Positions 3,178 to 37,005 of a DNA stretch of 64,000 nucleotides are shown one piece after another. A program made the translations under genes and the position numbers. How positions within the stretch are numbered: position 1 is the first letter of the stretch; every line of letters starts with the position of its first letter. The notes below the pieces were generated by a model. It had not been told where the DNA came from and did no database searches. It saw only the letters and a program-made list of their open reading frames with translations. This DNA is from Haliotis rubra (taxonomy: Eukaryota), in the NCBI RefSeq assembly GCF_003918875.1, contig NW_025767357.1, forward strand, positions 1,798,001-1,862,000, given 5' to 3'.

Positions 3178-3668
3178 TAGGTTCTGAACCTGATGTTGAT
3201 ATTTGACATCTCATTTGATTCACATTTGCAACTATGACGCCCTAAAATGTCTTTAAACATCAGGATGACCATGTAATTCAAGCACTACAAACTCAATGTC
3301 ACCACAAGGCATCTCCAACACTAATGATCACAGCTCGAATCCTAGTCTGATTCATCCTATTGATGGTTCCATTTGTCAGCACCATACCGCCATTGATCAG
3401 TTTCACAGAAGTTGAAAAGTGAGAACCCTTCCATCAATAAGCGTTTTGTAAGATATACATCTTCATAAAAGTTAAACAACGCTAAATGTTTTCAGTCTAC
3501 AGAAACCCCGGCATGTTGGTCATATGGAATAATCGTGTTTTCTATACTGAACCAAGCAACAGCGAGGTATCATTGTTGCAACCAAAAGTCAACTGACATT
3601 TCTTCTGACCGATATCAGGCATCAACGTACCCATTTAAAACCCAAGCTTGCACCCAACAGGCAAAGGT

Positions 3669-4941: not shown

Positions 4942-6156
4942 TCAGTACAGTCCACACATGGCATAGAAGAAGGACATGCTGGCAAGAATGTTGACAATGG
5001 TGAACACCTTAAAGCCGAGTCTATCAAGCGCGGCAGCGATGTCCGACCCAAGAACCACTTTAATACCGGTGCTATCTCCATGTGTATCGGGAGCCTGGTC
5101 AATGGTTTTGACTTTGACTATGTCATCAGCAAGGATCTTGATCTTCTTGTCTGGCAAGAGATACGTCAGCAAGCGGGTTGCCCTTATGTACCTTGGGTCT
5201 CGGTGGTGGAATGCCAGGTTGACAACGGTGACGATGGTGGCCGCCATGCTGAGAAAGATTTCAGTAGCTAGATAGGCACTGAAGTAACATACTCCGTCTG
5301 AGTTCTCGGGAAGAGCGTCGTTGACGAGTGTGAGGAACACAGCATAGGAAAGCATAACAGAGATGCAGAGGGTGATCTTCTCTCCCGAGTTGGCAGGCAG
5401 AGCAAAGACGAGGGAGTTCAATAGAGACAGAAACACTATTGGCAGGATCATGTTGATAATGTAGAACAGGGTCTTACGTTTTATGTTTAAGGTGAATTCC
5501 ACACGGAAATGACGGCCCCTGTGTTGCCAAACCTTTTGTGGAACTATTTCTTCCAGCTCCCACTCGCCATTTTCCTCATACTTCATGTGCAATACCGGTT
5601 CTGGAGCTAGATCAAGGTTTACAATTTTCCTTTTACAGCTCAACTGCTGCAGGATCAGCTTGCAGGACTGGGTGTCGAAAGGATAGTGACGGACATCTAC
5701 CTTGCAGTAGGTCTTGTAAAAATCGCCAGGAAACCATACTATGGTACCTGTCGACTCCAGATAGACTTTCAAGTTCCTGTTACCAATTTGGCCGTAATTG
5801 GAAACGGCATTCTGCACGATGACGTCTGGGAGCCAGAGCTTGTCTGTTGGCACATAGATGACCTCCGTGTTGTATTCCTTCGGATTCCATTTGAGAAGAG
5901 GCTCCTTCCAAGTCAGGTCAAAAATGGCAGACAGACTTAGAACTTGATCCTTTTCGTTGAGATCCACCAACGAGTTAATACTCATCCAGACGTCAATGGT
6001 CCAGTTCGGAGAATTGTTTTGGTTTGGCCAAACCAGAGGGTCGTAATTCCTGAAGATATCTTTAAACAGTTGACTCTCGTTCTTTGGTACTGGCAAAGAT
6101 CCTGACAGTGCGGCACGACATACTGAAACAAGGACAACGAGCACACCCAGAAACAT
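4942..6156 (-). CDS. Atypical nAChR-like Cys-loop receptor subunit, group A copy 1 (404 aa, single coding exon)
   Basis: Signal peptide MFLGVLVVLVSVCRAALS; WLPDV loop A motif; Cys-loop CKVDVRHYPFDTQSC (C-x13-C); NGEWEL; M1 after KRKTLFY; SGEKITLCISVMLSYAVFL M2; M3; short cytoplasmic loop; M4 after LDRL. No YxCC in loop C. Confidence 0.95.
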   Translation of the reverse strand: MFLGVLVVLVSVCRAALSGSLPVPKNESQLFKDIFRNYDPLVWPNQNNSPNWTIDVWMSINSLVDLNEKDQVLSLSAIFDLTWKEPLLKWNPKEYNTEVIYVPTDKLWLPDVIVQNAVSNYGQIGNRNLKVYLESTGTIVWFPGDFYKTYCKVDVRHYPFDTQSCKLILQQLSCKRKIVNLDLAPEPVLHMKYEENGEWELEEIVPQKVWQHRGRHFRVEFTLNIKRKTLFYIINMILPIVFLSLLNSLVFALPANSGEKITLCISVMLSYAVFLTLVNDALPENSDGVCYFSAYLATEIFLSMAATIVTVVNLAFHHRDPRYIRATRLLTYLLPDKKIKILADDIVKVKTIDQAPDTHGDSTGIKVVLGSDIAAALDRLGFKVFTIVNILASMSFFYAMCGLY

Positions 6157-8085: not shown

Positions 8086-8139
8086 TACTCTTTGTTGTAT
8101 AAAAGGGAGACCATGATAGGAATCTTATTGCACTACACG

Positions 8140-9400: not shown

Positions 9401-10621
9401 TCAGTACAGTCCACACATGGCATAGAAGAAGAACATGCTGGCAACAATGTTGACAATGGTGAACACCTTAAAGCCGAGTCTATCCAGCGCAGCAGCGATG
9501 TCCGACCCAAGAACCACTTTAATCCCTGTGCCTTCTTCGTGCGTATCGGGAGCCTGGTCAGTGGTTTTGACTTTGACTATGTCATCAGCAAGGATCTTGA
9601 TCTTCTTGTCTGGCAAGAGATACGTCAGCAAGCGGGTTGCCCTTATGTACCTTTGGTCTCGGTGGTGGAAGGCGAGGATGACAACGGTGACTATGGTGGC
9701 CACCATGCTGAGAAAGACTTCAGTAGCTAGATAGGCACTGAAGTAACATACTCCGTCTGAGTTCTCGGGAAGAGCGTCGTTGACGAGTGTGAGGAACACA
9801 GCATAGGAAAGCATAACAGAGATGCAGAGGGTGATCTTCTCTCCCGAGTTGGCAGGCAGAGCAAAGACGAGGGAGTTCAATAGAGACAGAAACACTATTG
9901 GCAGGATCATGTTGACAATGTAGAACAGGGTTTTACGTTTTATGTTTAAGGTGAATTCCACCCGGAAATGTCGGCTTCTGTGTTGCCAAACCTTTTGTGG
10001 AACTATTTCTTCCAGCTCCCACTCCCCATTTTCCTCATAATTCATGTGCAATACTGGTTCTGGAGCTAGATCAAGGTTTACAATCTTCTTTTCACAGCTC
10101 AACGGCTGCAGGATCAGGTTGCAGGACTGGGTGTCGAACGGATAGTGACGGACATCTACCTTACAGTAGGTCTTGTAAAAGTCCCCAGGAAACCATATTA
10201 TGGTACCTGTCGACTCCAGATAGACTTTCAAGTTCCTGTTACCAATTTGGCCGTAATTGGAAACGGCGTTCTGCACGATGACATCTGGGAGCCAGAGCTT
10301 GTCTGTTGGCACATAGATGACCTCCGTGTTGTATTCCTTCGGATCCCATTTGAGAAGAGGCTCCTTCCACGTCAGTCCAAACATGGCTGACAGACTTAGA
10401 ACTTGATCCTTTTCGCTGAGATCCACCAACGAGTTAATACTCATCCAGACGTCAATGCTCCAGTTCAATGAATTGTTTTGGTTTGGCCAAACCAGAGGGT
10501 CGTAATTCCTGAAGATATCTTTAAACAGCTGACTCTCGTTCTTTGGTACAGGCAAAGTTTCGGGGCCCGACATTTCTGCATGACATACTGAAACAAGGAC
10601 AACGAGCACACCCAGAAACAT
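9401..10621 (-). CDS. Atypical nAChR-like subunit, group A copy 2 (406 aa from MFLGV; an in-frame ATG at 10690 would add 23 aa)
   Basis: Close paralogue of copy 1 with the same motifs and an intact ORF. Start placed at the signal-peptide Met shared by all four copies. Confidence 0.93.
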   Translation of the reverse strand: MFLGVLVVLVSVCHAEMSGPETLPVPKNESQLFKDIFRNYDPLVWPNQNNSLNWSIDVWMSINSLVDLSEKDQVLSLSAMFGLTWKEPLLKWDPKEYNTEVIYVPTDKLWLPDVIVQNAVSNYGQIGNRNLKVYLESTGTIIWFPGDFYKTYCKVDVRHYPFDTQSCNLILQPLSCEKKIVNLDLAPEPVLHMNYEENGEWELEEIVPQKVWQHRSRHFRVEFTLNIKRKTLFYIVNMILPIVFLSLLNSLVFALPANSGEKITLCISVMLSYAVFLTLVNDALPENSDGVCYFSAYLATEVFLSMVATIVTVVILAFHHRDQRYIRATRLLTYLLPDKKIKILADDIVKVKTTDQAPDTHEEGTGIKVVLGSDIAAALDRLGFKVFTIVNIVASMFFFYAMCGLY

Positions 10622-12900: not shown

Positions 12901-13379
12901 TATATTTTATGTCGTAATTTACCTACCTCTGAAATTTGTGGTTGTCATTTGGGGTTATTTGATTTAATAAAACCAGTGTCCACGAGGAAAATTCAATATG
13001 GTTGCTATCTTAATACATGAAATATGCCTGTTAAATGCACACAATAGAGTTACCTGGTCTTACCATGGTAACATTTCAGGTGGGATGGCAACTGTATTCC
13101 AGTTCCCACACGTGCTGAGTCAAAGGTTTGCTTCATACATTCCAATTATCAAGATACAATTAGTATGGATTCTGTGTCAGTATTTATTATCAGATGATTA
13201 AAGCAATCCTTTACAGTCTTTACTCGGGCAATTGGGATGTGCATTGGCTGCTCTCGCTAAACATCCATATATCTAAAGGATCATGATGGTTTTCTGTGCT
13301 TGAATAAGGCCTTCCATATTATATGGAGTAAAGCATGAACAATATACTCGACAAAACTGAAAAAGTAATTCTTGAGTTA

Positions 13380-14160
13380 CGCGTGTGCTTAGAAGATGCC
13401 AGAATTTTGGGAATGACACCCATCCTTTCTTCCTGAACATCTTCTTGTAATAACGATAGTCTTGGATGACGCTGATAGCTGGTGACTGCTAGAGACTTAT
13501 GTTGTGAGCTACCAAGAAATCAGTACCGTGTGTGGACCCTAACACTGTTGCTTGGTGGTGGAAAGCCGGTACTACCTGATGATGCCCATCTGTTAGGTTT
13601 CCATGGACATTAACAAGACATGTTCCTCGCCTGTGAGACTTACAGCACCAAATATGTCGACCTTTTTGTATGCAACACCCAGTATAAGGAAGGATAGCAA
13701 TATATGGATGAACAACTTCTTTATTGCTGTGAGAGCGACGTTTCGGTGTAGGTTCTTCATCCATATATATTGTTATCCTTCCTTACTGCCCAAACTTCTA
13801 AATGCCTCCCAAACAAGCTACCCAGTATAACGCTTTCCTCGTAGCCGACAGAGGAGGATCCACCCATTTCACCTTTGAAGAAAGAAACAATATCCATCAC
13901 TAAACAATATGTTATTTCAACGTATAGACGCCACTGATGACGTAAGAAACACCACTGCAGCTGCTGAAGTCCATTAGGGTGAGATAACTCCTAGAACGTC
14001 TTGCTCGGATCGTGACAACTCCTAAAGGCTTGTGAATGTGCACAAATTGGAGGCAGGACAGGAATTTGTGTTGCAGTGTATGTTGCATGAATGTCTTGTT
14101 TCAAAAGTAAAAGACCCGGATGTCGCGATCCTGTGCATCTGTTGTGGGGCCAGATTTCAA
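13380..14160 (-). mobile_element. Ancient Tc1-like relic co-duplicated with the receptor genes
   Basis: IWCCKSHRRGTCLVNVHGNLT resembles Tc1 VWGGISxxGRTxLVxVxGNLT. Homologous to 18970-19760 and 23390-24015. Confidence 0.6.
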
Positions 14161-14869
14161 GTATTTGAATAGTATTTTGCATAATGTTACATAGGCAATG
14201 TTTCAGCCATCCCGCAACGATAACAGTTTATACGTGATATATAAGCAATTAGTACCATATAGTCATGTCGACTATGGACAGTAAAACAACTCCAGTATCG
14301 CACATCTGTATTTAATACCAACATGTAACCATACCCAGAAGTCAGTATACACAATACAATATGGACTATAGATGCCAGGAGCTGAAGGTAGGTCCCTATA
14401 AACAGGACCATGGTGACTTCAGTACTTTAGGATATCACCTGTATTTACAGCATCGCTGCAGGTGTTGACGTTTGCCAAGCATAAAACACATAGTCTACGA
14501 CCAAAACAGAAGTGGACGACTAGATCTTGGGTACATTTCAAGCTGACAGTGAGTTTGCAAAATGGGTAGGTGTTAGGACAACCTTCGAAACATAACCAGC
14601 AGGCGTGAGAAGATGAATCACAGACACAATTAAGACATTTACAAAAGGAAGGATTATTAAAATTTCGTTCTCGACTCTGATCCCTGATCTACTACCCAGA
14701 TTGGTAGTGAGAAACACACAATGTAAAACATATTAGATTCACTGGTTTACTTTAGACATTATTATCAGAATATTCCTGAAACAGTGATGATAAATAATAT
14801 GCTTTTAAAGAATGTATTTCACAATTCATCACTATTTCGTATTTTTCAGGTGAACAGTTGTCTGTTTGC

Positions 14870-15045: not shown

Positions 15046-15159
15046 ACATACTGATGATAGTGTCACAGTGGTACAGCTGTGCCGATAGCAGAGATTTCTT
15101 ACGGGTGTGGACAGGGTTTTGTCATTGTTATTTACTGAATATATTGTTGACCTGGAGAA

Positions 15160-16380
15160 TCAGTACAGTCCACGCATGGCATAGAAGAAGAACATGCTGG
15201 CAACAATGTTGACAATGGTGAACACCTTTAAGCCGAGTCTATCCAGCATGGCAGCGATGTCCGACCCAACAACTACTTTAATCCCTGTGCCTTCTTCATG
15301 CGTATCGGGAGCCTGGTCAGTGGTTTTGACTTTGACTATGTCATCAGCAAGGATCTTGATCTTCTTGTCTTGCAAGAGATACGTCAGCAAGCGGGTTGCC
15401 CTTATGTACCTTTGGTCTCGGTGGTGGAAGGCGAGGATGACAACGGTGACGATGGTGGCCACCATGCTGAGAAAGACTTCAGTAGCTAGATAGGCACTGA
15501 AGTAACATACTCCGTCTGAGTTCTCAGGAAGAGCATCGTTGACGAGTGTGAGGAACACAGCATAGGAAAGCATAACAGAGATGCAGAGGGTGATCTTCTC
15601 TCCCGAGTTGGCAGGCAGAGCAAAGACGAGGGAGTTCAATAGAGACAGAAACACTATTGGCAAGATCATGTTGACAATGTAGAACAGGGTCTTACGTTTT
15701 ATGTTTAAGGTGAATTCCACCCGGAAATGTCGGCTTCTGTGTTGCCAAACCTTTTGTGGAACTATTTCTTCAAGCTCCCACTCCCCATTTTCCTCATAAT
15801 CCATGTGCAATACTGGTTCTGGAGCTAGATCAAGGTTTACAATCTTCTTTTTACAGCTCAACGGCTGCAGGATCAGCTTGCAGTACTGGGTGTCGAAAGG
15901 GTAGTGACGGACATCTACCTTGCAGTAGGTCTTGTAAAAGTCCCCAGGAAACCATATTATGGTACCTGTCGACTCCAGATAGACTTTCAAGTTCATGTTA
16001 CCAATTTGGCCGTAATTGGAAACGGCATTCTGCACGATGACGTCTGGGAGCCAGAGCTTGTCTGTTGGCACATAGATGACCTCCGTGTTGTATTCCTTCG
16101 GATCCCATTTGAGAAGAGGCTCCTTCCACGTCAGGCCAAACATGGCTGACAGACTTAGAACTTGATCCTTTTCGTTGAGATCCACCAACGAGTTAATTCT
16201 CATCCAGATGTCAATGCTCCAGTTCAATGAATTGTTTTGGTTTGGCCAAACCAGAGGGTCGTAATTCTTGAAGATATCTTTAAACAGCTGACTCTCGTTC
16301 TTTGGTACAGGCAAAGTTTCGGGGCCCGACATTTTTGCATGACATACTGAAACAAGGACAACGAGCACACCCAGAAACAT
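15160..16380 (-). CDS. Atypical nAChR-like subunit, group A copy 3 (406 aa from MFLGV; in-frame upstream ATG at 16449)
   Basis: Recent duplicate of copy 2 (about 15 aa differences), intact ORF, Cys-loop CKVDVRHYPFDTQYC, GEK-M2. Confidence 0.93.
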   Translation of the reverse strand: MFLGVLVVLVSVCHAKMSGPETLPVPKNESQLFKDIFKNYDPLVWPNQNNSLNWSIDIWMRINSLVDLNEKDQVLSLSAMFGLTWKEPLLKWDPKEYNTEVIYVPTDKLWLPDVIVQNAVSNYGQIGNMNLKVYLESTGTIIWFPGDFYKTYCKVDVRHYPFDTQYCKLILQPLSCKKKIVNLDLAPEPVLHMDYEENGEWELEEIVPQKVWQHRSRHFRVEFTLNIKRKTLFYIVNMILPIVFLSLLNSLVFALPANSGEKITLCISVMLSYAVFLTLVNDALPENSDGVCYFSAYLATEVFLSMVATIVTVVILAFHHRDQRYIRATRLLTYLLQDKKIKILADDIVKVKTTDQAPDTHEEGTGIKVVVGSDIAAMLDRLGLKVFTIVNIVASMFFFYAMRGLY

Positions 16381-17743: not shown

Positions 17744-18643
17744 CGAGGGCCTATCAAAAGTGTTGTGCCTAAAATACTTCTGATATGTGCATGATAAAAA
17801 TAACTGTATGATGATAAAGGTTTATATCATTTACATAAACGTAACATAGACATGCACATGTCGCTAGTTTCCGGTCACATCTAATCACATGTACACCTAA
17901 ATAAACCGCAGAAACGGATAAGCTTCAGTAGAGAGCATTCGTAACTACTCGTACATTCCCGAATGCCGGATGGCGTCTCGTACCCCTCGCGTGGCCATGT
18001 TTACGACTGGGCCCTGTCTAAACGCAAATGGGCATGGATATGAAAATAGTCTAGTACTATTACCAAGGAAAGAGAACTCTGAATTTGCAAACATGGCTCC
18101 TAGAATCAAGGATAATCTACAGCATCTTCTATTCTTCCTGCTAAAATATTCTATGTCCCGTGGGCAAAACAGCAATATTGTCATTCCCTTTGTAAATATG
18201 TTTCAGTGTTTAAAGTTGCTGATCTATTAGCTCAAAGTTTATGTTTAAATTGTGCTTTGCATAGTTTAACGAAGTTACAAAGTTCAACAGGGCCGCCATT
18301 TCCATGCTTCGAAATGCGTTTTACTAGGCGCGATTTCATTGGTTTGCCACGTTTCTTGGCAATAATGGCGTACGATAGGGTACAACTCTTCTTGTAGGTC
18401 ACGGAAAAAGGCGAGTAGTTACGAATGGAGTAGAGAACAGTTATAAAGCGTTTGGTCCTCGAGGGCCAACCAGCGAAGCACATTGAAGAGCGATTGACAG
18501 CAGTACGAGTACCCCATGAGACTCAGTACTCGTACGCGGTCAATCGCTCTTCAGTGTGCTTCGCCGGGTGGCCCTTGAGGATCAAACAGTTTATGACTGC
18601 TCTGTACTCTAGCGTATCCATTTCTGCCGTTGATAACCCCTCG
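17744..18643. mobile_element. Second copy of the mariner foldback element, with nested element at 17935-18428
   Basis: Near-identical to 12001-12900, same TIRs, hairpin and AGTAGAGA TSD. Confidence 0.85.
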
Positions 18644-18969
18644 TTTATTTAGGTCTTACCATGGTAACATTTGAGGTGGGATGGCAACTGTATTCCAGTT
18701 CCCACACGTGCTGAGTCAAAGGTTTGCTTCATACATTCCAACTATCAAGATACAATTAGTATGGATTTTGTGTCAGTATTTATTATCAGATGATTAAAGC
18801 AATCCTTTACAGTCTTTACTCTGGCAATTGGGATGTGCATTAGCTGCTCTCGCTAAACATCCATATATCTAAAGGATCATGATGGTTTTCTGTGCGTGAA
18901 TAAGGACTTCCTTATTATAAGAGTAAAGCATGAATGATATACTCGCCCATAGTGCAAAAGTAATTCTTG

Positions 18970-19760
18970 AGTTACGCGTGTGCTTAGAAGATGCCAGAAT
19001 CTGTGGAACGACACCCATCCTTTCTTCCTGAACATCTTCTTGTAATAACGGTAGTCTTGGATGACGCTGATAGCTGGTGACTGCTAGAGAGTTATGTTGT
19101 GAGCTACGAAGCCATCAGTACCGTGTGTGGACCCTAACACTGTTGCTTGGTGGTGGAAAGCCGGTACTACCTGATGATGCCCATCTGATAGGTTTCCATG
19201 GACATTAACAAGACATGTTCCTCGCCTGTGAGACTTACCACACCAAATATGTCGACCTCTTTTATGCAACACCCAGTATAAGGAAGGATAGCAATATATG
19301 GATGAACAACTTCTTTATTGCCGTGAGAGCGACGTTTCGGTGTAGGTTCTTCATCCATATATTGTTATCCTTCCTTACTGCCCCAACTTCTAAATGCCTC
19401 TCAAACAAGTTACCCAGTATAACGCTTTCCTCGTAGCCGACAGAGGAGGATCCACCCATTTCTCCTTTGAAGAAAGAAACAATATCCATCACTGAACAAT
19501 ATGTTATTTCAACGTTGGAGACGCCACTGATGACGTAAGCAACACCACTGCAGCTGCTGAAGTCCATTGGGGTTAGATAACGCCTAGAACGTCTTGCTCG
19601 GATCCTGACAACTCCTAAATGCTTGTGGATGTGCACAAATTGGAGGCAGGACAGGAATTTGTGCTGGAGTGTATGTTGCATGAATATCTTGTTTCAAAAG
19701 TAAAAGACCCGGATGTCGCCATCCTGTGCATCTGTTGTGGGCCAGATTTCAAGTGTTTGA
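18970..19760 (-). mobile_element. Ancient Tc1-like relic (duplicate)
   Basis: Homologous to 13380-14160. Confidence 0.6.
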
Positions 19761-19763
19761 ATT

Positions 19764-20050
19764 GTATTTTGCTAACAGTCATGATCACTATTTTATGCTT
19801 TACAGTACTGTTGAAATGACAGTAAATTGTCATTTGAAGAAATTATGTTAATGTCAACGTAATGGCCAATATCAGGTGGGTGTTATGCCCCTTGTTGAAT
19901 TCAAGACGAATGGTGCTGTTCCATGTCAAAAGTCATCGTAAACAATGAACACGAATTATTACAGAACATAAAGAAATGGTGCTGACATCGCATTCGATAA
20001 TAAATACCAAACCAGCAACAGCAAGGTATAATTGTTGGAACCAAAGTCAG
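19764..20050 (+). pseudogene. 3' relic of a group B receptor gene (end of M4, stop codon and 3' flank)
   Basis: Encodes LLTVMITILCFTVLLK* versus LLTVMITILCFALLLKE* of the gene at 26389-27591. Downstream sequence aligns with 27590-27810 (cccttgtt..ttcaagac.aatg; tacagaa...aagaaatggtg). Confidence 0.85.
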
Positions 20051-20959
20051 CTTCAACCAGTCTCATATTACATTTTCCTCTGACCGATATCAGACATCAA
20101 CGTGCCCACTTAGAATCAAGCTTGCTCCCAATAGGCAAAGGTTCAGTTTGTGTCATGAATGTAATGTTCCTGACCCAGGCATTATGCTTCACAGGCACAG
20201 GTTGTAACCCAATATCCTATAGTCCGAGAGTTACCCCAACAAGACGCTGGTGGTAGGTGAGAGAGTGAGTTCGAATTTAATGTTACATAGGCAATGTTTC
20301 AGCCATACCGCAATGAAAACAGTTTATACGTGATATATAAGCAATACGTCATGTCGACTATGGACAGTAAAACAACTCCAGTATCGCACATCTGTATTTA
20401 ATACCAACATGTAACCATACCCAGAAGTCACTATACACAATACAATATGGACTATAGATGCAAGGAGCTGAAGGTAGGTCCCTATAAACAGGACCATGGT
20501 GACTTCAGTACTTTAGCATATTTCCTGTATTTACAGCATCGTTGCAGGTGTTGACGTTTGCCAAGCATAATAACACATAGTCTACGACCAAAAGAGTAGT
20601 GGACGACTAGATCTTGGGTACATTTCAAGCTGACAGTGAGTTTGCAAAATGGGTAGGTGTTAGGACAACCTTCGAAACATAACCAGCAGGCGTGAGAAGA
20701 TGAATCACAGACACAATTAAGACATTGACAAAAGAAAGGATTATTAAAATTTCGTTCTCGAATCTGATCCCTGATCTACTACCCAGATTGGTAGTGAGAA
20801 ACACACAATGTAAAACATATTAGATTCACTGGTTTACTTGAGACATTATTATCAGAATATTCCTGAAACAGTGATGATAAATAATACGCTTTTAAAGAAT
20901 GTATTTCACAATTCATCACTATTTCGTATTTTTCAGGTGAAAAGTTGTCTATCCTTTGC

Positions 20960-21135
20960 ATATGTTACTGACTGGTGCTATTGGTTAGGCAGGATACGGT
21001 TAACATTTCATTCTTTGATAGTCATTCACAAACACATGCTCTGTCATCATATCTAATGATTGTCTGGTCCAGTCCCGACTGTTCACAGACCGCAATATAC
21101 AGCTGGAATACTGTTGAATGCGGTGTCAAACAAAC
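20960..21135 (+). mobile_element. Decayed SINE family B (duplicate of 14870-15045)
   Basis: Same motifs as 14870-15045. Confidence 0.7.
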
Positions 21136-21215
21136 ACATACTGATGATACTGTCTTACGGGAGTGGACAGGGTTTTGTCATTGTTATTTACTGAATATAT
21201 TGTTGACAAGGTAGA

Positions 21216-22435
21216 TCAGTACAGTCCAGACATGGCATAGAAGAAGGACATGCTGGCAACGATGTTGACAATGGTGAACACCTTAAAGCCGAGTCCATCC
21301 AGCGCAGCAGCGATGTCGGACCCAAGAACCACTTTAATCCCTGTGCAATCATCATGTGTATCGGGAGCCTGGTCAATGGTTTTGACTTTGACTATGTCAT
21401 CAGCATTGATCTTGATCTTCTTGTCTGGCAAGAGATACGTCAGCAAGCGGGTTGCCCTTATGTACCTTGGGTCTCGGTGGTGGAATGCCAAGTTGACAAC
21501 GGCGACGATGGTGGCCGCCATGCTGAGAAAGATTTCAGTAGCTAGATAGGCACTGAAGTAACATACTCCGTCTGAATTCTCGGGAAGAGCGTCGTTGACG
21601 AGTGTGAGGAACACAGCATAGGAAAGCATAACAGAGATGCAGAGGGTGATCTTCTCTCCCGAGTTGGCAGGCAGAGCAAAGACGAGGGAGTTCAATAGAG
21701 ACAGAAACACTATTGGCAGGATCATGTTGACAATGTAGAACAAGGTTTTACGCTTCATGTTTAAGGTGAATTCCACACGGAAATGACTGCCCCTGTCTTG
21801 CCAAACCTTTTGTGGAACTATTTCTTCCAGCCCCACTCCCCATTTTCCTCATAATTCATGTACACAATTGGTTCTGGAGCTAGATCAAGGTTTACAATCT
21901 TCCTTTCACAGCTCAACGGCTGCAGGATCATCTTACAGTACTGGGTGTCGAAAGGGTAGTGACGGACATCTACCTTGCAGTAGGTCTTGTAAAAGTCCCC
22001 AGGAAACCATATTATGGTACCTGTCGACTCCAGATAGACTTTCAAGTTCCTGTTACCAATTTGGCCGTAATTGGAAACGGCGTTCTGCACGATGACGTCT
22101 GGCAGCCAGAGCTTGTCTGTTGGCACATAGATGACCTCCGTGTTGTATTCCTTCGGATCCCATTTGAGAAGAGGCTCCTTCCACGTCAGTCCAAACATGG
22201 CTGACAGACTTAGAACTTGATCTTTTTCGTTGAGATCAACCAACGAGTTAATACTCATCCAGACGTCAATGCTCCACTTCGGAGAATTGTTTTGGTTTGG
22301 CCAAACCAGAGGGTCGTAATTCCTGAAGATATCTTTAAACAGTTGACTCTCGTTCTTTGCCACTGGCAAAGATTCGGAGCCTGACAGTGCGGCACGACAT
22401 ATTGAAACAAGGACAACGAGCACACCCAGAATCAT
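21216..22435 (-). pseudogene. Atypical nAChR-like subunit, group A copy 4, split by a 1-nt deletion near 21832 (pseudogene or assembly error)
   Basis: ORFs 21818-22435 (extracellular domain) and 21216-21836 (TM domain) overlap in different frames. TGG-GAG-CTG of the paralogues reads TGG-GG-CTG here. No other disablements seen. Confidence 0.85.
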
Positions 22436-23389
22436 GTTGTGTGAACGTTGAATGAACTAATGGTGTATGTCCCAGGCGATAGCACTTCTATGATTAAAAC
22501 GTTGGGTGGTTCCATTCACCAGGGAGAATAGATTGAGCTTGATTTCCTATTAGAAGATGACATTCGTCAGTATTCCATCAAAACTACATCCTGGGAAAGT
22601 TGACATTGATTATTGAAGTTCGTTAATGCCCTTACATCAGCTGCAGCAAGATTAACAATAGTAATTATTACCCCTATTAACCCCCCTTCCCCGGAAATAG
22701 TGGACTTGTCCTCTCACAATTTGCCCAGCCTAAGGAAGCGTGAAATATAATGTGGGATGCATTATCGTTAGCCAAAGCCATTTATTCACGCTCAAAAGTA
22801 TCGGTGTTTGCGTGATTCAGATTGTTTGCTTAGTAAAATACCAAATGCTGAATCATTCTTGTCTGACGTCAAATTATTGTCTATGAATGTACTTTTCCCA
22901 TCAACGAGACACAGAGCGAAAGGTTAAAATCATTATGTCAATACTACACTTGAACGACTATCGTGTAAATTGTACAGTATTGTTATGCGCCTACTTGCAA
23001 ACTGAAACTATTAAACTATTACACCAAAACGCAAAAGAATTCATTGTGACACCATCAAGTACTGAAATTGTTATACAAATAACAGATGTTATTTTCTATT
23101 AGGTAAGTTGAAAAGCAATAACAAATCACTACAAGGCAATTTCAAAGGCAGTACTAAATAGAGTGACAGTGCAAAATAGTCAGTGGTAATTGCTGTCGGT
23201 GATGATAATATTAAAAGTGGTCAAAGCAACAATGGTGAAAGCTTCCCAAAACGGACTCCTACTGGCTATAATCAGGATCATCAAACAACATCTTGTCTTT
23301 GCGTAATGTGAGGAGTCATTGAGGAACCTTTCCTCATTCTCAACAAAAACAATGTCTTACAACATTGCAAATAAAATACACTGTCATAA

Positions 23390-24015
23390 TATGTTGAGTT
23401 ATGCGTGTGATTAAAAGAATACAAACCAAGACCCTTGCGAATGACACCTTGTGGAATGGCAGCCTATTCTTCCTGAATATCTTGTAGTAATTGCCATAAA
23501 GCCTGTAGTCTTGGGTGACGAAGAGCAAGTGGCAGCTGATGTTTATGTTCTCAGTTCCAAGGGACATCAATAATGTGTGCGGACACATATATTGTCGCTT
23601 GATGCTGGAAACCCAGGACCAGCTGATGACACACACCTGTTAGGATTCCCTGGATATGTACAAACTAGTTCTTAGCCTATAACGCTCATACCATTGCCGA
23701 CAAAGGAACATTCACCCATTACCCATTTGAAGAAAAAAAATGTTAGCATCATTGAACAAAGCGTTACGGCAACGGTGGAGAAACCACTGATGACGTTAGC
23801 AAAATAAATGCAAAAAGTCGATTAGTTTAAGAAAACGCAGGATCTTATTGCTCGGCTTCTGTCAACGAAAATGGCTATGGATGAACAATAGGGTCACAGG
23901 TTAGGATTTTGTGTTGCAGTGAACGTTGCAGTGAGTGTCATTTTTCTAAGGTGAAAGACCTGCATGTCGCGATCATGTTCTTCTGTTGTGAGGGCAGATT
24001 CCTTGTGTTTCAATG
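23390..24015 (-). mobile_element. Ancient Tc1-like relic (older paralogue of 13.4 and 19.0 kb)
   Basis: RHPRLQALWQLLQDIQEE*AAIPQGVIR resembles the Tc1 C-terminal LQEEWxxIPQ motif. Aligns with 19420-19760. Confidence 0.6.
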
Positions 24016-24426
24016 CATTTGTAAATGCTTCGATGTTCTTACGTTTCAGTTGCAAATCGTTTCATAATGACAGTATAAGCCCGGTAGTGAATTATATACT
24101 AGGAAACCATTTGTGCTAGAATAGTTCTTGATCTTGAGCCATTTCATGCATACAACTATTTTCAGTGGTGCATTAGACACATCCTGAAAAATCATCTATC
24201 AGTGATTACACAAACCATTCACAAACCAATTGGAACACTGAATTGTAACAGAGTCTGAACCACTTGACATTGTTAATGGTGAATGTGGTGTTTTAATCTT
24301 GGTTCTGCATTGTGGTCGCACTGCAAAACTGTTGCAATGCTTGATTGTCTACTATTCTAACAGCATGTGAACTGAACCCAGTTTCCACTGTGACAACTGG
24401 GGATGAACAGCCATAAAACTCACTGA

Positions 24427-24570
24427 GGGGTGATGGGGTAGCTTAGATGTAAAAGCGTTGGCTCGTCACGCCGAAAACCCGGGTTCGATTGGGTACAATG
24501 TGTGAAGCCCATTTCTGGTGTCCCCCGACGTTATATTGCTGGAATGCTGCTAAACTCACTCACTCACTCA
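24427..24570 (+). mobile_element. SINE family A
   Basis: Head, GGGTTCGATT, body and (ACTC)n tail. Confidence 0.88.
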
Positions 24571-26169
24571 TTGACACTGCCATATTCCTAGCAATTGTCA
24601 CCGAAATGACAACTGACACAGAGAACAGCTCAGCAATGTCACCCTTAAAATTTGTATGAAATACCTTGTCATCAAACGCTACCTCTTTTGACTCGATGCG
24701 AGTCCTTTTTGATAAACATGATTCCGTTTGGTTCTTGGACATTGGTTCTTGATCCTCAGAGTGTGCAGTCGTCTAAGGTGGAGCATTTCACTTTGAGTGA
24801 AACCATCCACTATCCCCATTGTCAGAATCCACAGACTGTGGCTCCTTATTCTTGATTCTCTCTTGTAGTAAGCAATATTCCTGTACAAACGTGTTTTGTC
24901 TTCTATGTCAAATATGACCTATTTTTACCAAATCAGTAAAATAGATCCATCACTCGCATTCGTTCTTCTACATCAAGATGAAACAAATCAGTGAATACCC
25001 ATGTTCATTAATCCGATGGAATCGCTTTTCTAATTGTCCACACTTTTAATCCAAGTATTGATTATCTTAATGATTTTGTAGCTGTTGGACTATATCCATC
25101 CTTTGTTGCCTTCACCACTTAGCTTCATGTTTATTCTGTAGATTGACAGTGCAGGACATCGACTGATTTGGCCTCGGTTAGTGTCCTTTCATCTCTCCTC
25201 GTTTGGTGACTCATACTCAAGTAAGCTTATGTTGTTGTGCATTGTCCGATGTCCTTAGATATGTCTGTCATTACCAAACACCCCCTCAAACTGAAACTTT
25301 GTATTGTGTCATTGAAAAATTATCACTAATTTCCAAAATCTAGAAATGTTGCTCATTACTAGGTATTTATTATGCATATAATATGTTGTTTACCATATTC
25401 TAATTGTGATCTAATCTAACTCTGACACCAAAACACTACTGTTTGTATGGTATTGCATTTTTGAATGAAAGTACAAGGCCTCTGATGCTGAAACGTTCCA
25501 TTGATAATGCCAGTTATCTTAATTAAGACTCCAAACAGAAATCCGTATCGTATTATACGCGGATTACTATGCCATTCCGCATGCATCATTATTTTATTTG
25601 ATGTGCAGGGATCATGTACCATTGTATTGGCATATTTTCAAATTGATCAGTCAACAAGCTTTGACCAGTTGTAAGTTTCGTAGTTCTGTCATCTCCGAAA
25701 CTACAAGGCCCATAATAAACCTCCTCTTAAAGTGTCTGTTTATAGTCTTCGAAGAATCTTTATCTGAATTAAATCATTGCTCTTTCATAGTGAAGGAGAG
25801 CTTGTATATTTGGAATGATAATGTATGAATTGGTTCAGTCGACGTCACAGGACATCTGATTCTCTGCAAAGAACAATTTGTCTGTCCGAACTGAGATGCG
25901 TCTGTATACACAACAGTAAAATCATTTAAAAGCAGAAATACAGTCGGTGTGAGATGAGCGCAAAAGTGTTTTCAGTTCACACATGCAGCACTACGTGACA
26001 GTTATCCTTACAATCTAAATGATGTTATTGATCACACCGCCTGTATATTGACATTGATCTCAGCTGGTCGTAGTTAAATGTGGTAATCTGGGCAGCGTTA
26101 TTCTCCATGTTACGTTTCTATTACTGACGTTTCTGATTTCACCCTACTTTTGTAATGTAAAACGGACAC

Positions 26170-26195
26170 TTTTTAATGACTATTTTTCTTTACAG
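26170..26195 (+). other. Putative 3' splice acceptor of a 5' UTR intron for group B copy 1
   Basis: TTTTTAATGACTATTTTTCTTTACAG|AATT. Comparable acceptors precede the other group B genes (CCTTAG|ATG at 33154; TTTATTTTGACAG at 51904). Confidence 0.55.
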
Positions 26196-26388
26196 AATTC
26201 AGGTGTGGTGACTTTCAGAAGGCAGTGTATAACACCCACCATATATTCATCATTAGTCAGGGCATCTGCTGGATGGTAGAAGATCCAAGAGGGTTTCACA
26301 CGAGCTTCCCAACTGTATCCAACCTGTCCCAAACAGGAAAAGAAGACACTCTAATCAGATATAAGGATCTTTGATCACCAAGGTGACA

Positions 26389-27591
26389 ATGTCTAATCTA
26401 TATTTTGTTCTAGCAGCATGCATCTCGATTTGTGGTACGAGCGGTCGACAATCAGGAACTGATCAAGGTCCTCTGTACACCTTGTATAATGACCTACTGG
26501 AACACTACAAACCGTATATCAGGCCCAGGAAGAATCCTAACGATACCGTGGAGGTAGTAGTTTCTTATAGCATTGTATCAGTGGAGGCCTTGGACGAAAC
26601 CACACAGACAGTAGCTTCATCTGCAGTCATCCAATTTGAATGGAAAGATGACCTGATGACCTGGAACTCAAGTGACTATGGTGGTGTACAATTTATAAAT
26701 ATACCTGTGGAGAAACTGTGGTTTCCGGACTTGAGTTTGACAAATGGATTAGAAGACTTATCTTTGATTCTTCCCAGCGGAGAAATAGCAAGGGTGAACG
26801 ATGATGGATTGATCCAGTGGTACCATGGGATGAAGAAATGTACCAAGTGCTCTCTAGACATGACCAAATTTCCATTTGACACCCAAACATGCAGTATCAA
26901 TCTCATTCAGTGGGTTACTGTAATTTCCCAAGTCAATTTGACAGCAGGTGGGGTTCACATTGAATCGTCAATGTTTCAACAAAACGGAGAATGGGAAATA
27001 TTGGACAAATCAAAAGAGGTTATTGTTCATACATATACTGAGGTTTACATCCAGACGGAGCTGGTTTTCACATTCGTCTTCAAACGGAAATACCTGTATT
27101 ATATCATCACCAACATCCTTCCCGGCATGCTTCTCTCCGTCCTTAACCTTGGTGTGTTTCTACTTCCGCCTGAATCAGGGGAGAAGGTATCGCTATGTAT
27201 TTCCATAGTGCTGTCCTATGCAGTGTTCTTGTCTGTCATTGGAGGGAGTCTACCGGAAGTGTCAGACACTGTCAGCATCTTCAGTGTCTACCTCTTGACA
27301 ATGATGTTCCTCAAAGTCGCAACAACTTTGATAACAGTCTTCGTTTTGCAAGTTTACCATCAGACCACCGAAGAAGCAGATTCCCTCTCAAACCGCCTCA
27401 TGCAAAGACAAATACAAGACATCTCTAAATCAGATTATGAACAAGAGAGTACACTAGTAAAACAGCAGACGCCTTTGAAGAAGACAGGGAAACAACTCGC
27501 AAGATATTTAAACAAGATTGGTTTCACGATAGTATTTTTGCTCACAGTCATGATCACCATTCTGTGTTTTGCACTGTTGTTGAAAGAATAG
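26389..27591 (+). CDS. Atypical nAChR-like subunit, group B copy 1 (400 aa from ATG MSNLY)
   Basis: Signal peptide, YKPYIRP, WFPDL, Cys-loop CSLDMTKFPFDTQTC, NGEWEI, SGEKVSLCISIVLSYAVFL M2, four TMs. No vicinal Cys in loop C. The ORF-track TTG start is replaced by the first ATG. Confidence 0.95.
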   Translation: MSNLYFVLAACISICGTSGRQSGTDQGPLYTLYNDLLEHYKPYIRPRKNPNDTVEVVVSYSIVSVEALDETTQTVASSAVIQFEWKDDLMTWNSSDYGGVQFINIPVEKLWFPDLSLTNGLEDLSLILPSGEIARVNDDGLIQWYHGMKKCTKCSLDMTKFPFDTQTCSINLIQWVTVISQVNLTAGGVHIESSMFQQNGEWEILDKSKEVIVHTYTEVYIQTELVFTFVFKRKYLYYIITNILPGMLLSVLNLGVFLLPPESGEKVSLCISIVLSYAVFLSVIGGSLPEVSDTVSIFSVYLLTMMFLKVATTLITVFVLQVYHQTTEEADSLSNRLMQRQIQDISKSDYEQESTLVKQQTPLKKTGKQLARYLNKIGFTIVFLLTVMITILCFALLLKE

Positions 27592-29301
27592 TTAAATTGC
27601 CAAGTGAAGATTGTCAATGTAATGGACAAGCACTGTTTTGTTGTCCGTAATATATCTTGGCGGGAGTTATTTCCCTTGTTATTTTCAAGACCAATGCTCC
27701 CAGTCAAAATTTTGTCAATGTCGTATTAAGATCTGAAGCGAAGACCAAGTATGACTACAGAAATACAAGAAATGGTGTCGACTTCAAGGATTGACTTGTT
27801 ACTGAACCAAGAGGCCCCCAGCCAGTACAATTTGACAAAGAACACAATTATTCACCCACTGTCGATCAGTGGATATAAACGTAAAACTTGTTTTATGTGG
27901 TTGATGTTTTCCTTAAAATGAGAAAATGTGACCTTACGTGAAATGTGACCTCAGTGAACATGTGACCTCAAGTGAAATTTGACCACGGAAGCTAAATGCC
28001 TCTCAAATATAGTTCGAGATCTGTAGCCAAGATTTATGATTTCGTTACCTAAATCAAAGAGGAGTGATCACCATTGTGACATCAAATCTGCAGGAATAAA
28101 CAGAGCATGATGTATACGAAGATTTGTTGGATCGGTTGTATGACAGATAACGCTGAAGAGGATGTAGCACACTCTGACGGTGAGAGCTACAAGTGTTTAG
28201 CAGCATGACAACGTTATTCTATATAACGTGACGGAGGAAACAAGGGAGATTACTCTGATTGAAAGGTCAAGGTACCAGATATGTGAACATCAGTGTACAG
28301 ATCAAGACATGGGCCAGTCATGATGTCACCCGTGTACATCGACTCGGCTCTCGTCATGTTTAATAATTTAACCAATAAGCCTCATCGCTATGTCATGAGA
28401 AAAACGTTTACAGTTTCAAGCGTCTTAACTATTGGCTTAAAGCCGTGAAGCTGATTGAATATTTCAAGAAAAGAGTCAGGAACACTCAATTACATCTATC
28501 TGGTGACATGATCGAAGTATGGAACATTCAGTGACTTAACTAACTGCCTAAAGCCTCGAAAGGAACAGAACTGATTGGATACTTCTAGAATGGAAAGCAG
28601 TTAACTAAACCACGTGATCAACAGGAGAATTACTTCAATGGATATACAACTTCTTTATTACTTTCTATTGGACGTTTCGTTGTGGGCACTAACCGTCAAA
28701 AAGCAAGTGGTGTCACGGCTAGTATCTTTCCGCATGGAATGGTAATGACTCGAACGTTGGAAGAGATGAAGAGTTGTCCTGGAACATTTATGGCCAACGT
28801 TAAATGTTTGATGATTGTGATTCTGTTGCTTACTTTCAATCTATTAATAGTGTATATGTACTTTGGACATTTTCATCACATATCGAGGACTTGAACTGGC
28901 TACCTTGATATCAAAAATACTTTGAACCATTTCCAGGAATGATGTTCTGGTGGCGTGTTTGTTAGCTGTAGACAAGATGGTGTGAGCAGAGCGTCCATCT
29001 TGTAGACTTGTCATTCACGTATTATATGCTACTAAAAAAATAGGGGATATTTAATAAAAGGCTGCCACAACTATTGATATTTTATATCTTTAATGAGATA
29101 AATAGTTTAACATCAAATCGTTGAACATCAGTAGAGAGTGGTCGATGGTTGTCTACGCTGACGTACTACCAATCCACGGATACCCCATGTTTAGTGGGCA
29201 GGTGACCAGATGGTGGACACACGAACACGTGCAGACACCTAGTTGCGGGTATAGTAATGTGCAGGGTTTCATGTATTCCCTACAATTTCCAGGGATTCAT
29301 C

Positions 29302-29600: not shown

Positions 29601-30625
29601 AATATATGGTTTGAAAAATACCTTTTCCTTCCCAAACCCATATCCCAAAGTTCTTCTTCAACAGCGGGATGATGTATATTCCAAGTTATTTCTATGAATG
29701 GTCTAGTACTTGCGCCACTCTGTGGTGATTGCTTTGGACGTTTTGTTTATTTCCTGCGTTGTCTTTGCTTTTTATTAAGGGGGAATTTACGATGTTAGAG
29801 CTAGCCAGTAGGTTTTTTTCAGGGGAAAAACATCATTAAAAAAAATACAAATTAAACTAGCCGAAGATTGAACCTAGTTTCTGCTGAATTCTGCCAGAAA
29901 TTAAAACAGGAAAAATATTTGCCAGAAATGTCTGCAGAACAATTGTTTTGCCAGATATTTTTGCAGAAATTCACTTTCAGATCCAATTTGGGAGCTTATG
30001 AACTCGTGAACACTCTAGCACCTTAATTTTTTTTATTTATTTCCTCGAAACCTTCCAGTAACATAAACATTTCTTTGTAGCTTGCTTTCTTCTGTGTGTC
30101 AAGTTGCTGGCCATAATTTAACACATTTTGCTCGTGAACGTGATAATAAGAATTGTAAATGGTTACTGTAGTTTTATCGGGACAAAAACAAGACCCGCCT
30201 CTTATCGAGAGGATTCACACAAATATAACTTCTGCATTCATACTTGAACAATGAGCTTAATGCACGTTAAGTGACATGTAATTATTATACTATTAGGTAT
30301 ATAAAAATATACCGACTCCTTTGGACGATTCTACCAATAATAATGTTACACGGATCCGTAGAACCAACCATGCTGGTCACAGTATTAGACAGATTCTACA
30401 CCACCCAATCATGGAGCAATAATTACTTTGAACAAACGAAAAATGATTATTTAGAGCTGCGTTTCCTGTTAAAGCATTATGTATGAAACATACAACATTT
30501 GTGTTATCGTTACACTTTTTCATACTTTTGTTTTGAATTTCAAAATGGTGTACATGTGATTGTGTACATGAGTATCAACGATTGCTTCCTCTTTTCGCGA
30601 ACACCTGGTGTCATCAGTGTAACTC

Positions 30626-31090
30626 TAATAATAATAATAATAATAGCATATTTGTTACGCGCATATATCCATGCTCAAGCATGCTCAAAGCGCACAAGAT
30701 AAAGATGAGATTAATTGTAAAGAGCTACAGTTCAAAGGCTATCTTGAACATGTGTGTTTTTAGATTGGATCTAAAAGAATTTTAAGTCACAACAGTCTCT
30801 GAGGCTCTGCGGGAGACTGTTCCAGGCTATAGATCCTGCATGGACAAAGGACCTCTTTCCATACATCACTGTCTTTACTTTGGGAACAACAAGCAAGTTC
30901 TTTTCCTGTGAACGGAGAGATCGGGAAGGCGTGTACACGGTTAGAAGATTGGATAGATAAGAAGGTGCAGTTCCAGCGAGACAGCGGAAAACAAGGCATA
31001 AGAGTTTAAACTGGATCCTGAACTCGACTGGAAGCCAGTGGAGAGTGTACAGTATAGGAGTGATGTGTTCATATTTTCCAGAGCGAGTCC
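30626..31090 (-). mobile_element. L2/CR1-group LINE 3' fragment
   Basis: HITPILYTLHWLPVEFRIQFK..YTPSRSLRS..GKRSF..WNSLP followed by a 3' UTR and (TTA)n tail. Confidence 0.9.
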
Positions 31091-36904: not shown

Positions 36905-37005
36905 GACACATGGGTACAATGTGTGAAGCCCGTTTCTGGTATCCCCACTGTGATATTGCTGGAATATTTCTAAAAGCGGCGTAAAACTAAACTCACCCAC
37001 TCACT
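36905..37005 (+). mobile_element. SINE family A, 5'-truncated
   Basis: CACATGGGTACAATGTGTGAAGCCC..GCTGGAATATT..GCGGCGTAAAACTAAACTCAC. Confidence 0.85.

What the first reader, a model, noticed from the sequence alone, without database searches (positions are those of the whole stretch)
19740..27810. Ancestral duplication unit was a head-to-head A/B gene pair; the B partner was deleted from upstream units
Seen: group A copy 4 (minus) and group B copy 1 (plus) are divergent, about 3.95 kb apart, with a Tc1 relic at 23.4-24.0 kb between them. Upstream of A copy 3 the same relic (19.0-19.76 kb) runs directly into the last ~17 codons and 3' flank of a B gene. That implies a ~3.5 kb deletion joining the equivalent of about 24015 to about 27530, over similar TGTTT..ATTT sequence. 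In the preceding unit a further ~500 bp deletion near 14180 removed even this tail, and B-type 3' flank also appears at about 3495-3560 downstream of A copy 1. Inference: an A/B cassette was tandemly amplified. Divergent linkage plus complementary pocket residues (B keeps loop-B Trp, A does not) suggests a co-regulated heteropentamer driven from a shared promoter region.
Basis: partly seen in the sequence, partly recalled or inferred. Interest (0 to 1): 0.75.

Follow-up and report, generated by a model that had tools for sequence, protein, structure and literature searches.

The report
Abalone receptor-gene array keeps duplication scar
A tandem array of intron-free nicotinic-receptor-like channel genes in an abalone genome keeps a dead 17-codon stub of a neighbouring gene, which shows that a back-to-back gene pair was once copied as a block; this is sound but ordinary gene-family history, and the proposed two-subunit channel remains untested.

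Summary
The core observation holds. Upstream of A3, a block shared with the A4-B1 spacer ends at 19762. It runs straight into the last 17 codons and 3' flank of a B1-type gene (19763 to about 20003), with 74 bits against at most 35 for shuffles. This equals a 3.5-kb gap joining 24014 to 27531. Unit 2 keeps the same junction plus 10 B bases, then lacks a further 505 bp.

Two details fail.
- The shared block is not shown to be Tc1: it exists only at this locus and gives no transposase match.
- The "B-type flank" at 3495-3560 is ancestral A-side flank. It shares only a 12-base motif, TACTGAACCAAG, with B1's flank, and that motif marks both duplication breakpoints.

Other abalones add the history. 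Haliotis cracherodii and H. rufescens carry one head-to-head A/B pair and no scar. H. asinina has three A copies and the same scar with identical junctions. The A-B block was therefore duplicated, and the extra B lost, before the split of this genome's lineage from H. asinina. Later amplification copied A only, and gene conversion homogenised the A genes.

The co-regulated heteropentamer is unsupported. A4 is frameshifted here, the spacer is 3.9-6.6 kb with no conserved core, and both proteins lack the acetylcholine site. This kind of array is already known in molluscs.

The parts
4942..6156 (-). A1, intact intronless Cys-loop channel gene (404 aa)
   Evidence: ORF. Pfam Neur_chan_LBD 1.5e-41 and Neur_chan_memb 9.2e-18.
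9401..10621 (-). A2, intact. The open frame runs on to an upstream ATG at 10690.
   Evidence: It is 97.5% identical to A3 in the CDS.
15160..16380 (-). A3, intact. The open frame runs on to 16449.
21216..22435 (-). A4, the only A copy next to B1. It is broken in this assembly by a 1-bp deletion at CDS position 605, about window 21831.
   Evidence: Two overlapping ORFs. The alignment of A1-A4 shows a single gap column. Coordinate.
18961..19762 (.).
   Evidence: No transposase signal.
19763..19819 (+). Dead remnant of a B1-type gene: the last 17 codons (second half of M4) ending in a premature TGA.
19820..20003 (+). Remnant of the B 3' flank, ending in the degenerate copy of the 12-base breakpoint motif (junction b|a).
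   Evidence: Orthologous at 80.8% over 395 bp to H. asinina.
20004..21215 (.). A4's 3' flank, the start of the next unit. It is homologous to 3544-3668 plus 4033-4797 and to 14182-15131.
23387..24014 (.). Unit-4 copy of the shared block, in the A4-B1 spacer.
24015..27530 (+). The stretch that has no counterpart in units 2 and 3: the B upstream region and the B body up to about codon 387 (about 3.5 kb).
26389..27591 (+). B1, intact intronless Cys-loop channel gene. The mechanical ORF starts at TTG 26371.
   Evidence: Orthologues at 89% (H. asinina) and 79-80% (H. cracherodii, H. rufescens), with dN/dS 0.14-0.22.
27800..27811 (+). Right breakpoint motif TACTGAACCAAG in B1's 3' flank.
   Evidence: One of only two exact copies in the first 30 kb of the window. 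Homology of the scar to the B1 flank ends here.
3545..3556 (+). Left breakpoint motif TACTGAACCAAG in A1's 3' flank. Unit-to-unit homology starts here.
   Evidence: The motif is present in degenerate form at the orthologous site in H. cracherodii and H. asinina.
13366..14180 (.). Unit-2 copy of the shared block (ends 14170) plus 10 B-derived bases (14171-14180), followed at 14181 by the second, 505-bp deletion junction.

Best explanation
This is a scar left by the growth of a gene array.

1. The ancestral abalone locus held one head-to-head pair of intronless nicotinic-receptor-like channel genes, A on one strand and B on the other. H. cracherodii and H. rufescens still look like this.
2. In the common ancestor of this genome's lineage and H. 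asinina, the whole roughly 7.8-kb A-to-B segment was duplicated in tandem. The breakpoints lay in a 12-base motif (TACTGAACCAAG) present both in A's 3' flank and in B's 3' flank.
3. In the left copy, a 3.5-kb deletion between short similar sequences (GTTTCAAT and GTTTCACGAT) removed B's upstream region and all but its last 17 codons.
4. Later expansion, by unequal crossing-over between A genes, copied only A-bearing units that carry this scar. One of them (unit 2) lost a further 505 bp.
5. Gene conversion or unequal exchange has since homogenised the A genes and about 1 kb on each side within each species. The block and scar between them kept their old divergence.

Shown: the scar, its junctions, its presence in a second species, the single-pair state in two more species, and the species-wise grouping of A genes. 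Inferred: the order of events, the two-step nature (duplication, then deletion) and the mechanisms.
For: - The scar is real and B1-type.
- Units 2 and 3 and H. asinina share identical junction positions on both sides of the scar.
- In the block tree, the B-adjacent blocks of both species group together (bootstrap 100) apart from the scar-adjacent blocks. In the tail tree, the two scars group apart from intact B tails (95).
- H. cracherodii and H. rufescens have a single A/B pair. Their A-side flank is collinear with window 1754-3656, and there is no B-like sequence 3' of A within 10 kb.
- The exact 12-mer occurs only at 3545 and 27800 in the first 30 kb of the window. A degenerate copy sits at the junction in unit 3 and in H. 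asinina.
- There are no A or B remnants in the 20 kb upstream of the window. A-type genes exist nowhere else in the genome.
- Concerted evolution: A-gene dS is 0.06-0.13 within a species and 0.23-0.27 between this genome and H. asinina, and the gene tree groups by species. Units 3 and 4 are 88% identical around the gene but only about 70% in the block. Orthologous non-coding sequence is 77-81% identical.
Against: - No species examined keeps two intact B copies in A-B-A-B order, so the full-cassette intermediate is inferred, not seen.
- The single-pair state in the North Pacific species could be a secondary collapse by unequal crossing-over.
- The unit 1/2 boundary (7038-9052) has lost the block and scar and is filled with repeats, so its origin is unclear.
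- The array is a mosaic. 3' flanks of two types are only 68% alike, and the 96.7% tract between units 2 and 3 is limited to 9373-14180 and 15132-19772. No simple series of events fits this.
- Support for a single clade of this genome's A genes is moderate (88).
Confidence: 0.6

Rival explanations
1. One-step replicative rearrangement; a complete second B never existed. While A's unit was being duplicated, the replication fork switched template twice at microhomologies: from the end of the shared block forward to B's tail, then from B's 3' flank back to A's 3' flank. About 240 bp of B's end thus became templated filler at the junction of an A-only duplication.
For: - Both junctions sit at short similar sequences: the 12-mer at b|a, and GTTTCA..AT at block|B.
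- No intact second B or other B fragment is found in this genome or in H. asinina.
- The final structure is identical to that of the two-step model.
Against: Nothing in the sequence separates it from duplication followed by deletion. Deletions are evidently frequent here (the 505-bp loss in unit 2 and the loss of block and scar after A1), so a separate deletion is not costly.
Confidence: 0.3
2. An older B gene (B0) once lay 3' of A. The block|B-tail junction is then itself the junction of a tandem duplication that ran from B0's tail through A to the end of the block, so nothing was deleted from inside a unit.
For: It would explain the scar with a single junction. B genes do occur in tandem on the plus strand (B1, B2, B3).
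Against: - H. cracherodii and H. rufescens have no B-like sequence within 10 kb 3' of A, and their flank is collinear with the window's left flank.
- There is no B body or tail left of A1 or in 20 kb further upstream.
- Window 3400-3543 is ancestral A-side flank, not B flank.
Confidence: 0.05
3. One reading: A and B are kept head-to-head because they are co-regulated from a shared promoter region and assemble into one heteropentamer with complementary pocket residues.
For: - The head-to-head adjacency is conserved in four abalone species, across dS of about 0.5.
- Both genes are under purifying selection: dN/dS 0.14-0.27 for B and 0.18-0.48 for A.
- B keeps the loop-B Trp in all four species while A has Leu.
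- Vertebrate GABA-A clusters keep alpha and beta genes head-to-head with parallel expression (PMC1934366).
Against: - The only A next to B in this genome is frameshifted, and the three intact A genes have no B neighbour.
- A was amplified without B in two species.
- The spacer is 3.9-6.6 kb and repeat-rich. Between distant species only about 0.5 kb next to A and about 1.6 kb next to B align, at about 60%, with no conserved central element.
- Both proteins lack the loop-C Cys pair, the loop-A Tyr and the loop-D Trp, so 'complementary' rests on one residue.
- The A-like gene of Gigantopelta has no B neighbour. B's nearest paralogues on another contig have no A neighbour.
Confidence: 0.12

Closest known systems
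Intronless, tandemly arrayed nAChR-like gene expansions of molluscs (Jiao et al. 2019, PMC6896357)
   Same: - Single-exon Cys-loop genes with LBD and TM domains.
- More than 100 such genes in this genome.
- Local tandem arrays built stepwise and in a lineage-specific way, with degenerate fragments left in the arrays.
   Different: That paper covers bivalves and a few other taxa, with no Haliotis and no mention of gene conversion or head-to-head pairs. Here the breakpoints, a shared scar and concerted evolution are resolved for one locus across four abalones.
Vertebrate GABA-A receptor gene clusters with head-to-head alpha/beta genes (PMC1934366)
   Same: Two different subunit genes of a pentameric channel family lie head-to-head. 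The arrangement is conserved through duplication of an ancestral cluster.
   Different: There the partners are known to co-assemble and show parallel expression, and the clusters were copied whole and kept. Here co-assembly is unknown and the duplicated B was lost while A multiplied.
Concerted evolution in tandem gene arrays through unequal crossing-over and gene conversion (general knowledge; examples are globin and opsin arrays)
   Same: Paralogues within a species are more alike than orthologues between species, although a flanking scar shows that the duplication is older than the species split.
   Different: Nothing unusual. The conversion tracts here end where flank homology ends (9373/15132 and 14180/19772).
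Cephalopod chemotactile receptors
   Same: Nicotinic-like cation-channel subunits that have lost the acetylcholine-site residues.
   Different: No evidence here for sensory expression or ligands, and relatedness to that family was not tested.

Membership tests
Cys-loop pentameric ligand-gated ion channel (nAChR-like) | Extracellular ligand-binding domain followed by the transmembrane domain | tested here: met
   PF02931 (E 1e-41) and PF02932 (E 1e-18 to 1e-22) in A1, B1, B2 and B3. The best solved relatives are nAChR alpha-6, alpha-7 and beta chains at E 1e-49 to 1e-53.
Cys-loop pentameric ligand-gated ion channel (nAChR-like) | Cys-loop: two cysteines 13 residues apart around FPFD | tested here: met
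   A has CKVDVRHYPFDTQSC and B has CSLDMTKFPFDTQTC in the translations.
Acetylcholine-binding (alpha-type) nicotinic subunit | Vicinal Cys-Cys in loop C | tested here: not met
   HMMER alignments to alpha-7 and alpha-6 place His/gap (A1) and Thr-Tyr (B1) at the Cys-Cys position.
Acetylcholine-binding (alpha-type) nicotinic subunit | Aromatic box: loop A Tyr, loop B Trp, loop C Tyr and Tyr, loop D Trp | tested here: not met
   A1 has Gln (loop A), Leu (loop B) and Ile (loop D). B1 has Thr (loop A), Trp (loop B, kept) and Val (loop D).
Tc1/mariner transposon (for the shared block) | DDE transposase coding remnant | tested here: not met
   No tblastn similarity to the window's Tc1-type DDE_3 remnants (best E 0.32 over 12 aa). 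No transposase Pfam hit in nine ORFs even at E up to 10.
Tc1/mariner transposon (for the shared block) | Dispersed copies in the genome | tested here: not met
   Only the three local copies were found in 1.38 Gb. Only the roughly 135-bp palindromic insert is dispersed.
Tc1/mariner transposon (for the shared block) | Terminal inverted repeats flanked by a TA duplication | not tested
   Not examined. The block's ends are not defined.
Bidirectional-promoter gene pair | Divergent starts within about 1 kb and a shared, conserved promoter | tested here: not met
   The starts are 3.95 kb apart here and 5.1-6.6 kb apart in the other species. There is no conserved central element.
Bidirectional-promoter gene pair | Co-expression of the two genes | not testable with these tools
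Mollusc intronless tandem nAChR expansion | Single-exon genes in same-family tandem arrays, expanded in a lineage-specific way | tested here: met
   Uninterrupted ORFs. More than 100 family members in the genome, clustered on contigs. Copy number differs between abalone species: 4, 3, 1 and 1 A genes.

The most novel reading that the evidence does not exclude
A and B form an abalone-specific orphan heteromeric cation channel, and selection keeps their genes head-to-head. Amplifying A without B, in this genome's lineage and in H. asinina, would then change subunit dosage or stoichiometry of one receptor. That would make this locus a natural experiment in how heteromeric channel composition evolves.
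Probability: 0.1. Interest if true: 0.5.

Novelty: new member of a known kind. Interest (0 to 1): 0.28.

Why it matters
The locus gives a clean, dated example of how the very large mollusc families of nicotinic-like channel genes grow:
- block duplication at a 12-base microhomology;
- quick loss of one of the two duplicated genes;
- A-only amplification by unequal exchange;
- gene conversion that makes old duplicates look young.

That last point is a caution for family trees of these genes. Species-specific clades need not mean species-specific duplications. The conserved A/B adjacency in four abalones is a reasonable, cheap lead for a co-expression and co-assembly test. Nothing here shows a new kind of system.

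Tried and rejected
- **Tc1 identity of the shared block.** Rejected: local-only copies and no transposase signal.
- **A 'unit 0' or B-flank remnant left of A1.** Rejected: 3380-3543 does not align to the B1 flank and is orthologous to the A-side flank in other species.
- **A lost B0 gene 3' of A.** Disfavoured by the flanks of H. cracherodii and H. rufescens and by the 20 kb upstream of the window.
- **A/B pairing elsewhere in this genome.** None. A exists only at this locus, and B's nearest paralogues (61%, contig C2113) have no A partner.
- **Deeper synteny.** The A-like gene of Gigantopelta aegis (about 45%), and one on an unidentified ENA contig, lie beside an LCM-domain gene (the Gigantopelta gene between LCM and CDC27) with no B. 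No LCM or CDC27 was detected in the 94 kb around the window. Orthology is therefore doubtful and the result uninformative.
- **First shuffle script.** It timed out and was rerun with a proper shuffler.
- **Technical note.** For the block tree, two neighbouring pieces of the H. asinina spacer were joined to skip an insertion. This affects only that alignment.
- **Not attempted.** No heteromer structure prediction, because the tools fold single chains only.


Full report
**What the window is.** It is G000:C2467:1798001-1862000 of a 1.38-Gb assembly. Earlier notes of this scan call the genome blacklip abalone. I did not verify the species name. The closest proteins are from Haliotis asinina (89-91% identity to A1), H. 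cracherodii and H. rufescens.

The window carries seven uninterrupted ORFs with Neur_chan_LBD and Neur_chan_memb domains:
- A1 4942-6156, minus strand.
- A2 9401-10621, minus strand.
- A3 15160-16380, minus strand.
- A4 21216-22435, minus strand.
- B1 26389-27591, plus strand.
- B2 33155-34327, plus strand.
- B3 51914-53146, plus strand.

The genome holds more than 100 such intronless genes, clustered on contigs. A-type genes occur only at this locus; the next best match is 35% identical. A4 carries a 1-bp deletion at CDS position 605, about window 21831. In this assembly that splits it into two overlapping frames.

**Check of the observation.**
- A sensitive self-comparison shows a non-coding block shared by units 2, 3 and 4: 13366-14170, 18961-19762 and 23387-24014. 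Identity between unit 4 and units 2/3 is 67-71%.
- In unit 3 the block ends at 19762. From 19763 the sequence aligns to 27531 onward, which is the last 17 codons and the 3' flank of B1.
- That alignment (19761-19989 against 27529-27785) is 65.6% identical over 259 columns, E 2e-18. It scores 74 bits, against a mean of 27 and a maximum of 35 for 100 dinucleotide shuffles.
- At protein level, 14 of 16 residues match B1. The tail is B1-type, not B2- or B3-type.
- The counterpart of 24015-27530 (3.5 kb) is missing.
- Unit 2 keeps the same block|B junction and 10 B-derived bases (14171-14180). It then jumps to the equivalent of about 20277, so 505 bp are missing.
- A4 and B1 are divergent and 3953 bp apart.

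**Two details that fail.**

First, the block is not shown to be a Tc1 relic.
- It has only these three local copies in the whole genome.
- It shows no similarity to the Tc1-type DDE_3 remnants elsewhere in the window.
- Its ORFs give no transposase hit in Pfam.
- Only a roughly 135-bp palindromic MITE-like insert, at 19279-19412 and its unit-2 copy, is dispersed in the genome.

Second, the 'B-type flank at 3495-3560' is not B-derived.
- 3380-3543 gives no significant alignment to the B1 flank.
- It aligns instead to the A-side flank of H. asinina (78.8% for 3399-3495) and sits in a stretch collinear with H. cracherodii.
- What is shared is an exact 12-mer, TACTGAACCAAG. In the first 30 kb of the window it occurs only at 3545-3556 and 27800-27811.

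**Comparison with other abalones**.
- H. cracherodii (L057) and H. rufescens (L061) each carry one A and one B1 orthologue, head-to-head, 5.4 and 6.6 kb apart.
- In H. cracherodii the sequence beyond A's 3' end is collinear with window 1754-3656, and the sequence beyond B is collinear with window 30301-32528. The H. rufescens locus is collinear with that of H. cracherodii. Neither species has a B-like sequence 3' of A within 10 kb.
- H. asinina (L056 and L058 merged, 29.6 kb) has three A copies and one B1 orthologue (89% aa), which is head-to-head with the third A.
- Between its first and second A lies the same structure as in unit 3 here: block, 17-codon B tail (15 of 17 residues), B flank, then A's 3' flank. 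It is 80.8% identical over 395 bp, and both junctions sit at the same positions.
- In a tree of the block, the B-adjacent copies of the two species group together (bootstrap 100), apart from the scar-adjacent copies.
- In a tree of tail plus flank, the two scars group apart from the intact B tails (95).

The duplication and the loss of the extra B therefore predate the split of this genome's lineage from H. asinina. They probably postdate the split from the North Pacific species, which keep the single pair.

**Mechanism.**
- Homology between units and A1's flank begins at 3544. This holds in every comparison: unit 3, H. asinina units i and ii, and H. cracherodii.
- Homology between the scar and B1's flank ends at the 12-mer at 27800.
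- The junction in unit 3 (about 19990-20003) and in H. asinina carries a degenerate copy of the motif. The motif is also present at the orthologous A-side site in the single-pair species H. cracherodii, at 10 of 12 bases.
- This fits a tandem duplication of the whole A-to-B segment with breakpoints in that microhomology.
- I cannot tell a duplication followed by a 3.5-kb deletion from a single replicative event with two template switches. The end product is the same.
- An older B gene 3' of A is disfavoured by the outgroup flanks and by the lack of any B remnant to the left.

**Later history.** The array is a mosaic.
- Units 2 and 3 are 96.7% identical, but only over 9373-14180 and 15132-19772. 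That tract ends on both sides exactly where flank homology ends.
- The 3' flanks come in two types: units 1 and 2 against units 3 and 4, about 68% alike.
- Between A1 and A2 the block and scar are gone and repeats fill the gap.
- A coding sequences are 93.5-97.5% identical within this genome and 93.7-97.9% within H. asinina, but 89.7-91.7% between the two.
- dS is 0.06-0.13 within a species and 0.23-0.27 between them. The gene tree groups copies by species, with support of 98 for H. asinina and 88 for the split that sets this genome's copies apart.
- At least two A copies existed before the species split, so this pattern is concerted evolution by gene conversion or unequal exchange. It is consistent with 88% identity around the gene between units 3 and 4, which is higher than the 77-81% seen for orthologous non-coding sequence.
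- dN/dS is 0.18-0.48 for A and 0.14-0.27 for B, so both are or recently were under purifying selection.

**Functional inference.** HMMER alignments to solved receptors give these residues at the acetylcholine-site positions:

| Position | A1 | B1 |
|---|---|---|
| Loop A Tyr | Gln | Thr |
| Loop B Trp | Leu | Trp |
| Loop D Trp | Ile | Val |
| Loop C Cys-Cys | absent | absent |

- The B loop-B Trp is conserved in all four species. Neither subunit has a canonical acetylcholine site.
- Both keep the GEK motif before M2. In this family that motif goes with cation selectivity (general knowledge, read from the translations).

Against a shared promoter and an obligate pair:
- The B-adjacent A4 is broken here, and A1-A3 have no B neighbour.
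- A was amplified without B in two species.
- The spacer is 3.9-6.6 kb with repeats. Between distant species only about 0.5 kb next to A and about 1.6 kb next to B align, at about 60%.
- An A-like gene in Gigantopelta has no B neighbour. B's nearest paralogues have no A neighbour.

For it:
- Four species keep the head-to-head adjacency.
- Vertebrate GABA-A clusters offer a precedent (PMC1934366).

**What is known already.** Massive expansion of intronless nAChR-like genes in molluscs, by retroposition followed by stepwise lineage-specific tandem duplication with degenerate remnants in arrays, is described in PMC6896357. Earlier follow-ups of this scan reached the same view for other arrays of this genome. 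This finding adds a well-resolved local history to a known kind of locus.

**Verdict.**
- Observation: largely confirmed.
- Evolutionary interpretation: supported in its core, with corrections. There was one ancient B loss, not several. The block is not Tc1. There is no B flank beside A1. A one-step origin is possible.
- Functional interpretation: untested, and on balance unlikely as stated.

Noticed in passing
window 33182-34129 and 51963-52912: B2 and B3 are 95% identical at DNA level only from about codon 10 to the end of M3. Their flanks and the last 65 or so codons (M3-M4 loop and M4) do not align at DNA level. This looks like a gene-conversion tract or a mosaic origin.
   Followed up: partly
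window 21831: A4 has a single-base deletion (TGGGAGCTG in A1-A3 reads TGGGGCTG in A4). It frameshifts an otherwise well-conserved gene, whose dN/dS to the other copies is 0.3-0.4. This could be a very recent pseudogene or an assembly error.
   Followed up: partly
window 3675-4030, 38942-39299, 62785-63138, 54501-54629: A roughly 356-bp repeat with copies 94-96% identical, one of them inserted in A1's 3' flank. Further copies lie just outside the window. It looks like a young non-autonomous element.
   Followed up: no
window 3009-3177, 24425-24554, 36907-37003, 37267-37360, 39762-39884, 59055-59164: Many copies of a tRNA-like short interspersed repeat, which also occurs in the H. cracherodii and H. 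asinina loci.
   Followed up: no
window 40490-42391: A tandem array of about 19 copies of a 98-bp unit, 92-98% identical, with strong GC skew.
   Followed up: no
window 44000-48500: ORFs on the plus strand that look, by eye only, like a non-LTR retrotransposon: zinc-knuckle, endonuclease-like and reverse-transcriptase-like pieces, broken into several frames.
   Followed up: no
window 56074-56834: A true Tc1/mariner-type transposase remnant (DDE_3, E 4e-10), on the minus strand and in broken frames.
   Followed up: partly
window 32013-32528; L057 (reverse complement) 20331-21221: A tandem repeat of about 76 bp between B1 and B2 is present at the collinear position in H. cracherodii and H. asinina. 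It is therefore an old satellite-like stretch kept in place.
   Followed up: no
L056/L058 (H. asinina), merged coordinates 16935-18445: The 3' flank of the third H. asinina A copy includes sequence homologous to window 3265-3544, which lies left of the original breakpoint. At least one later duplication in H. asinina therefore used a different left boundary.
   Followed up: no
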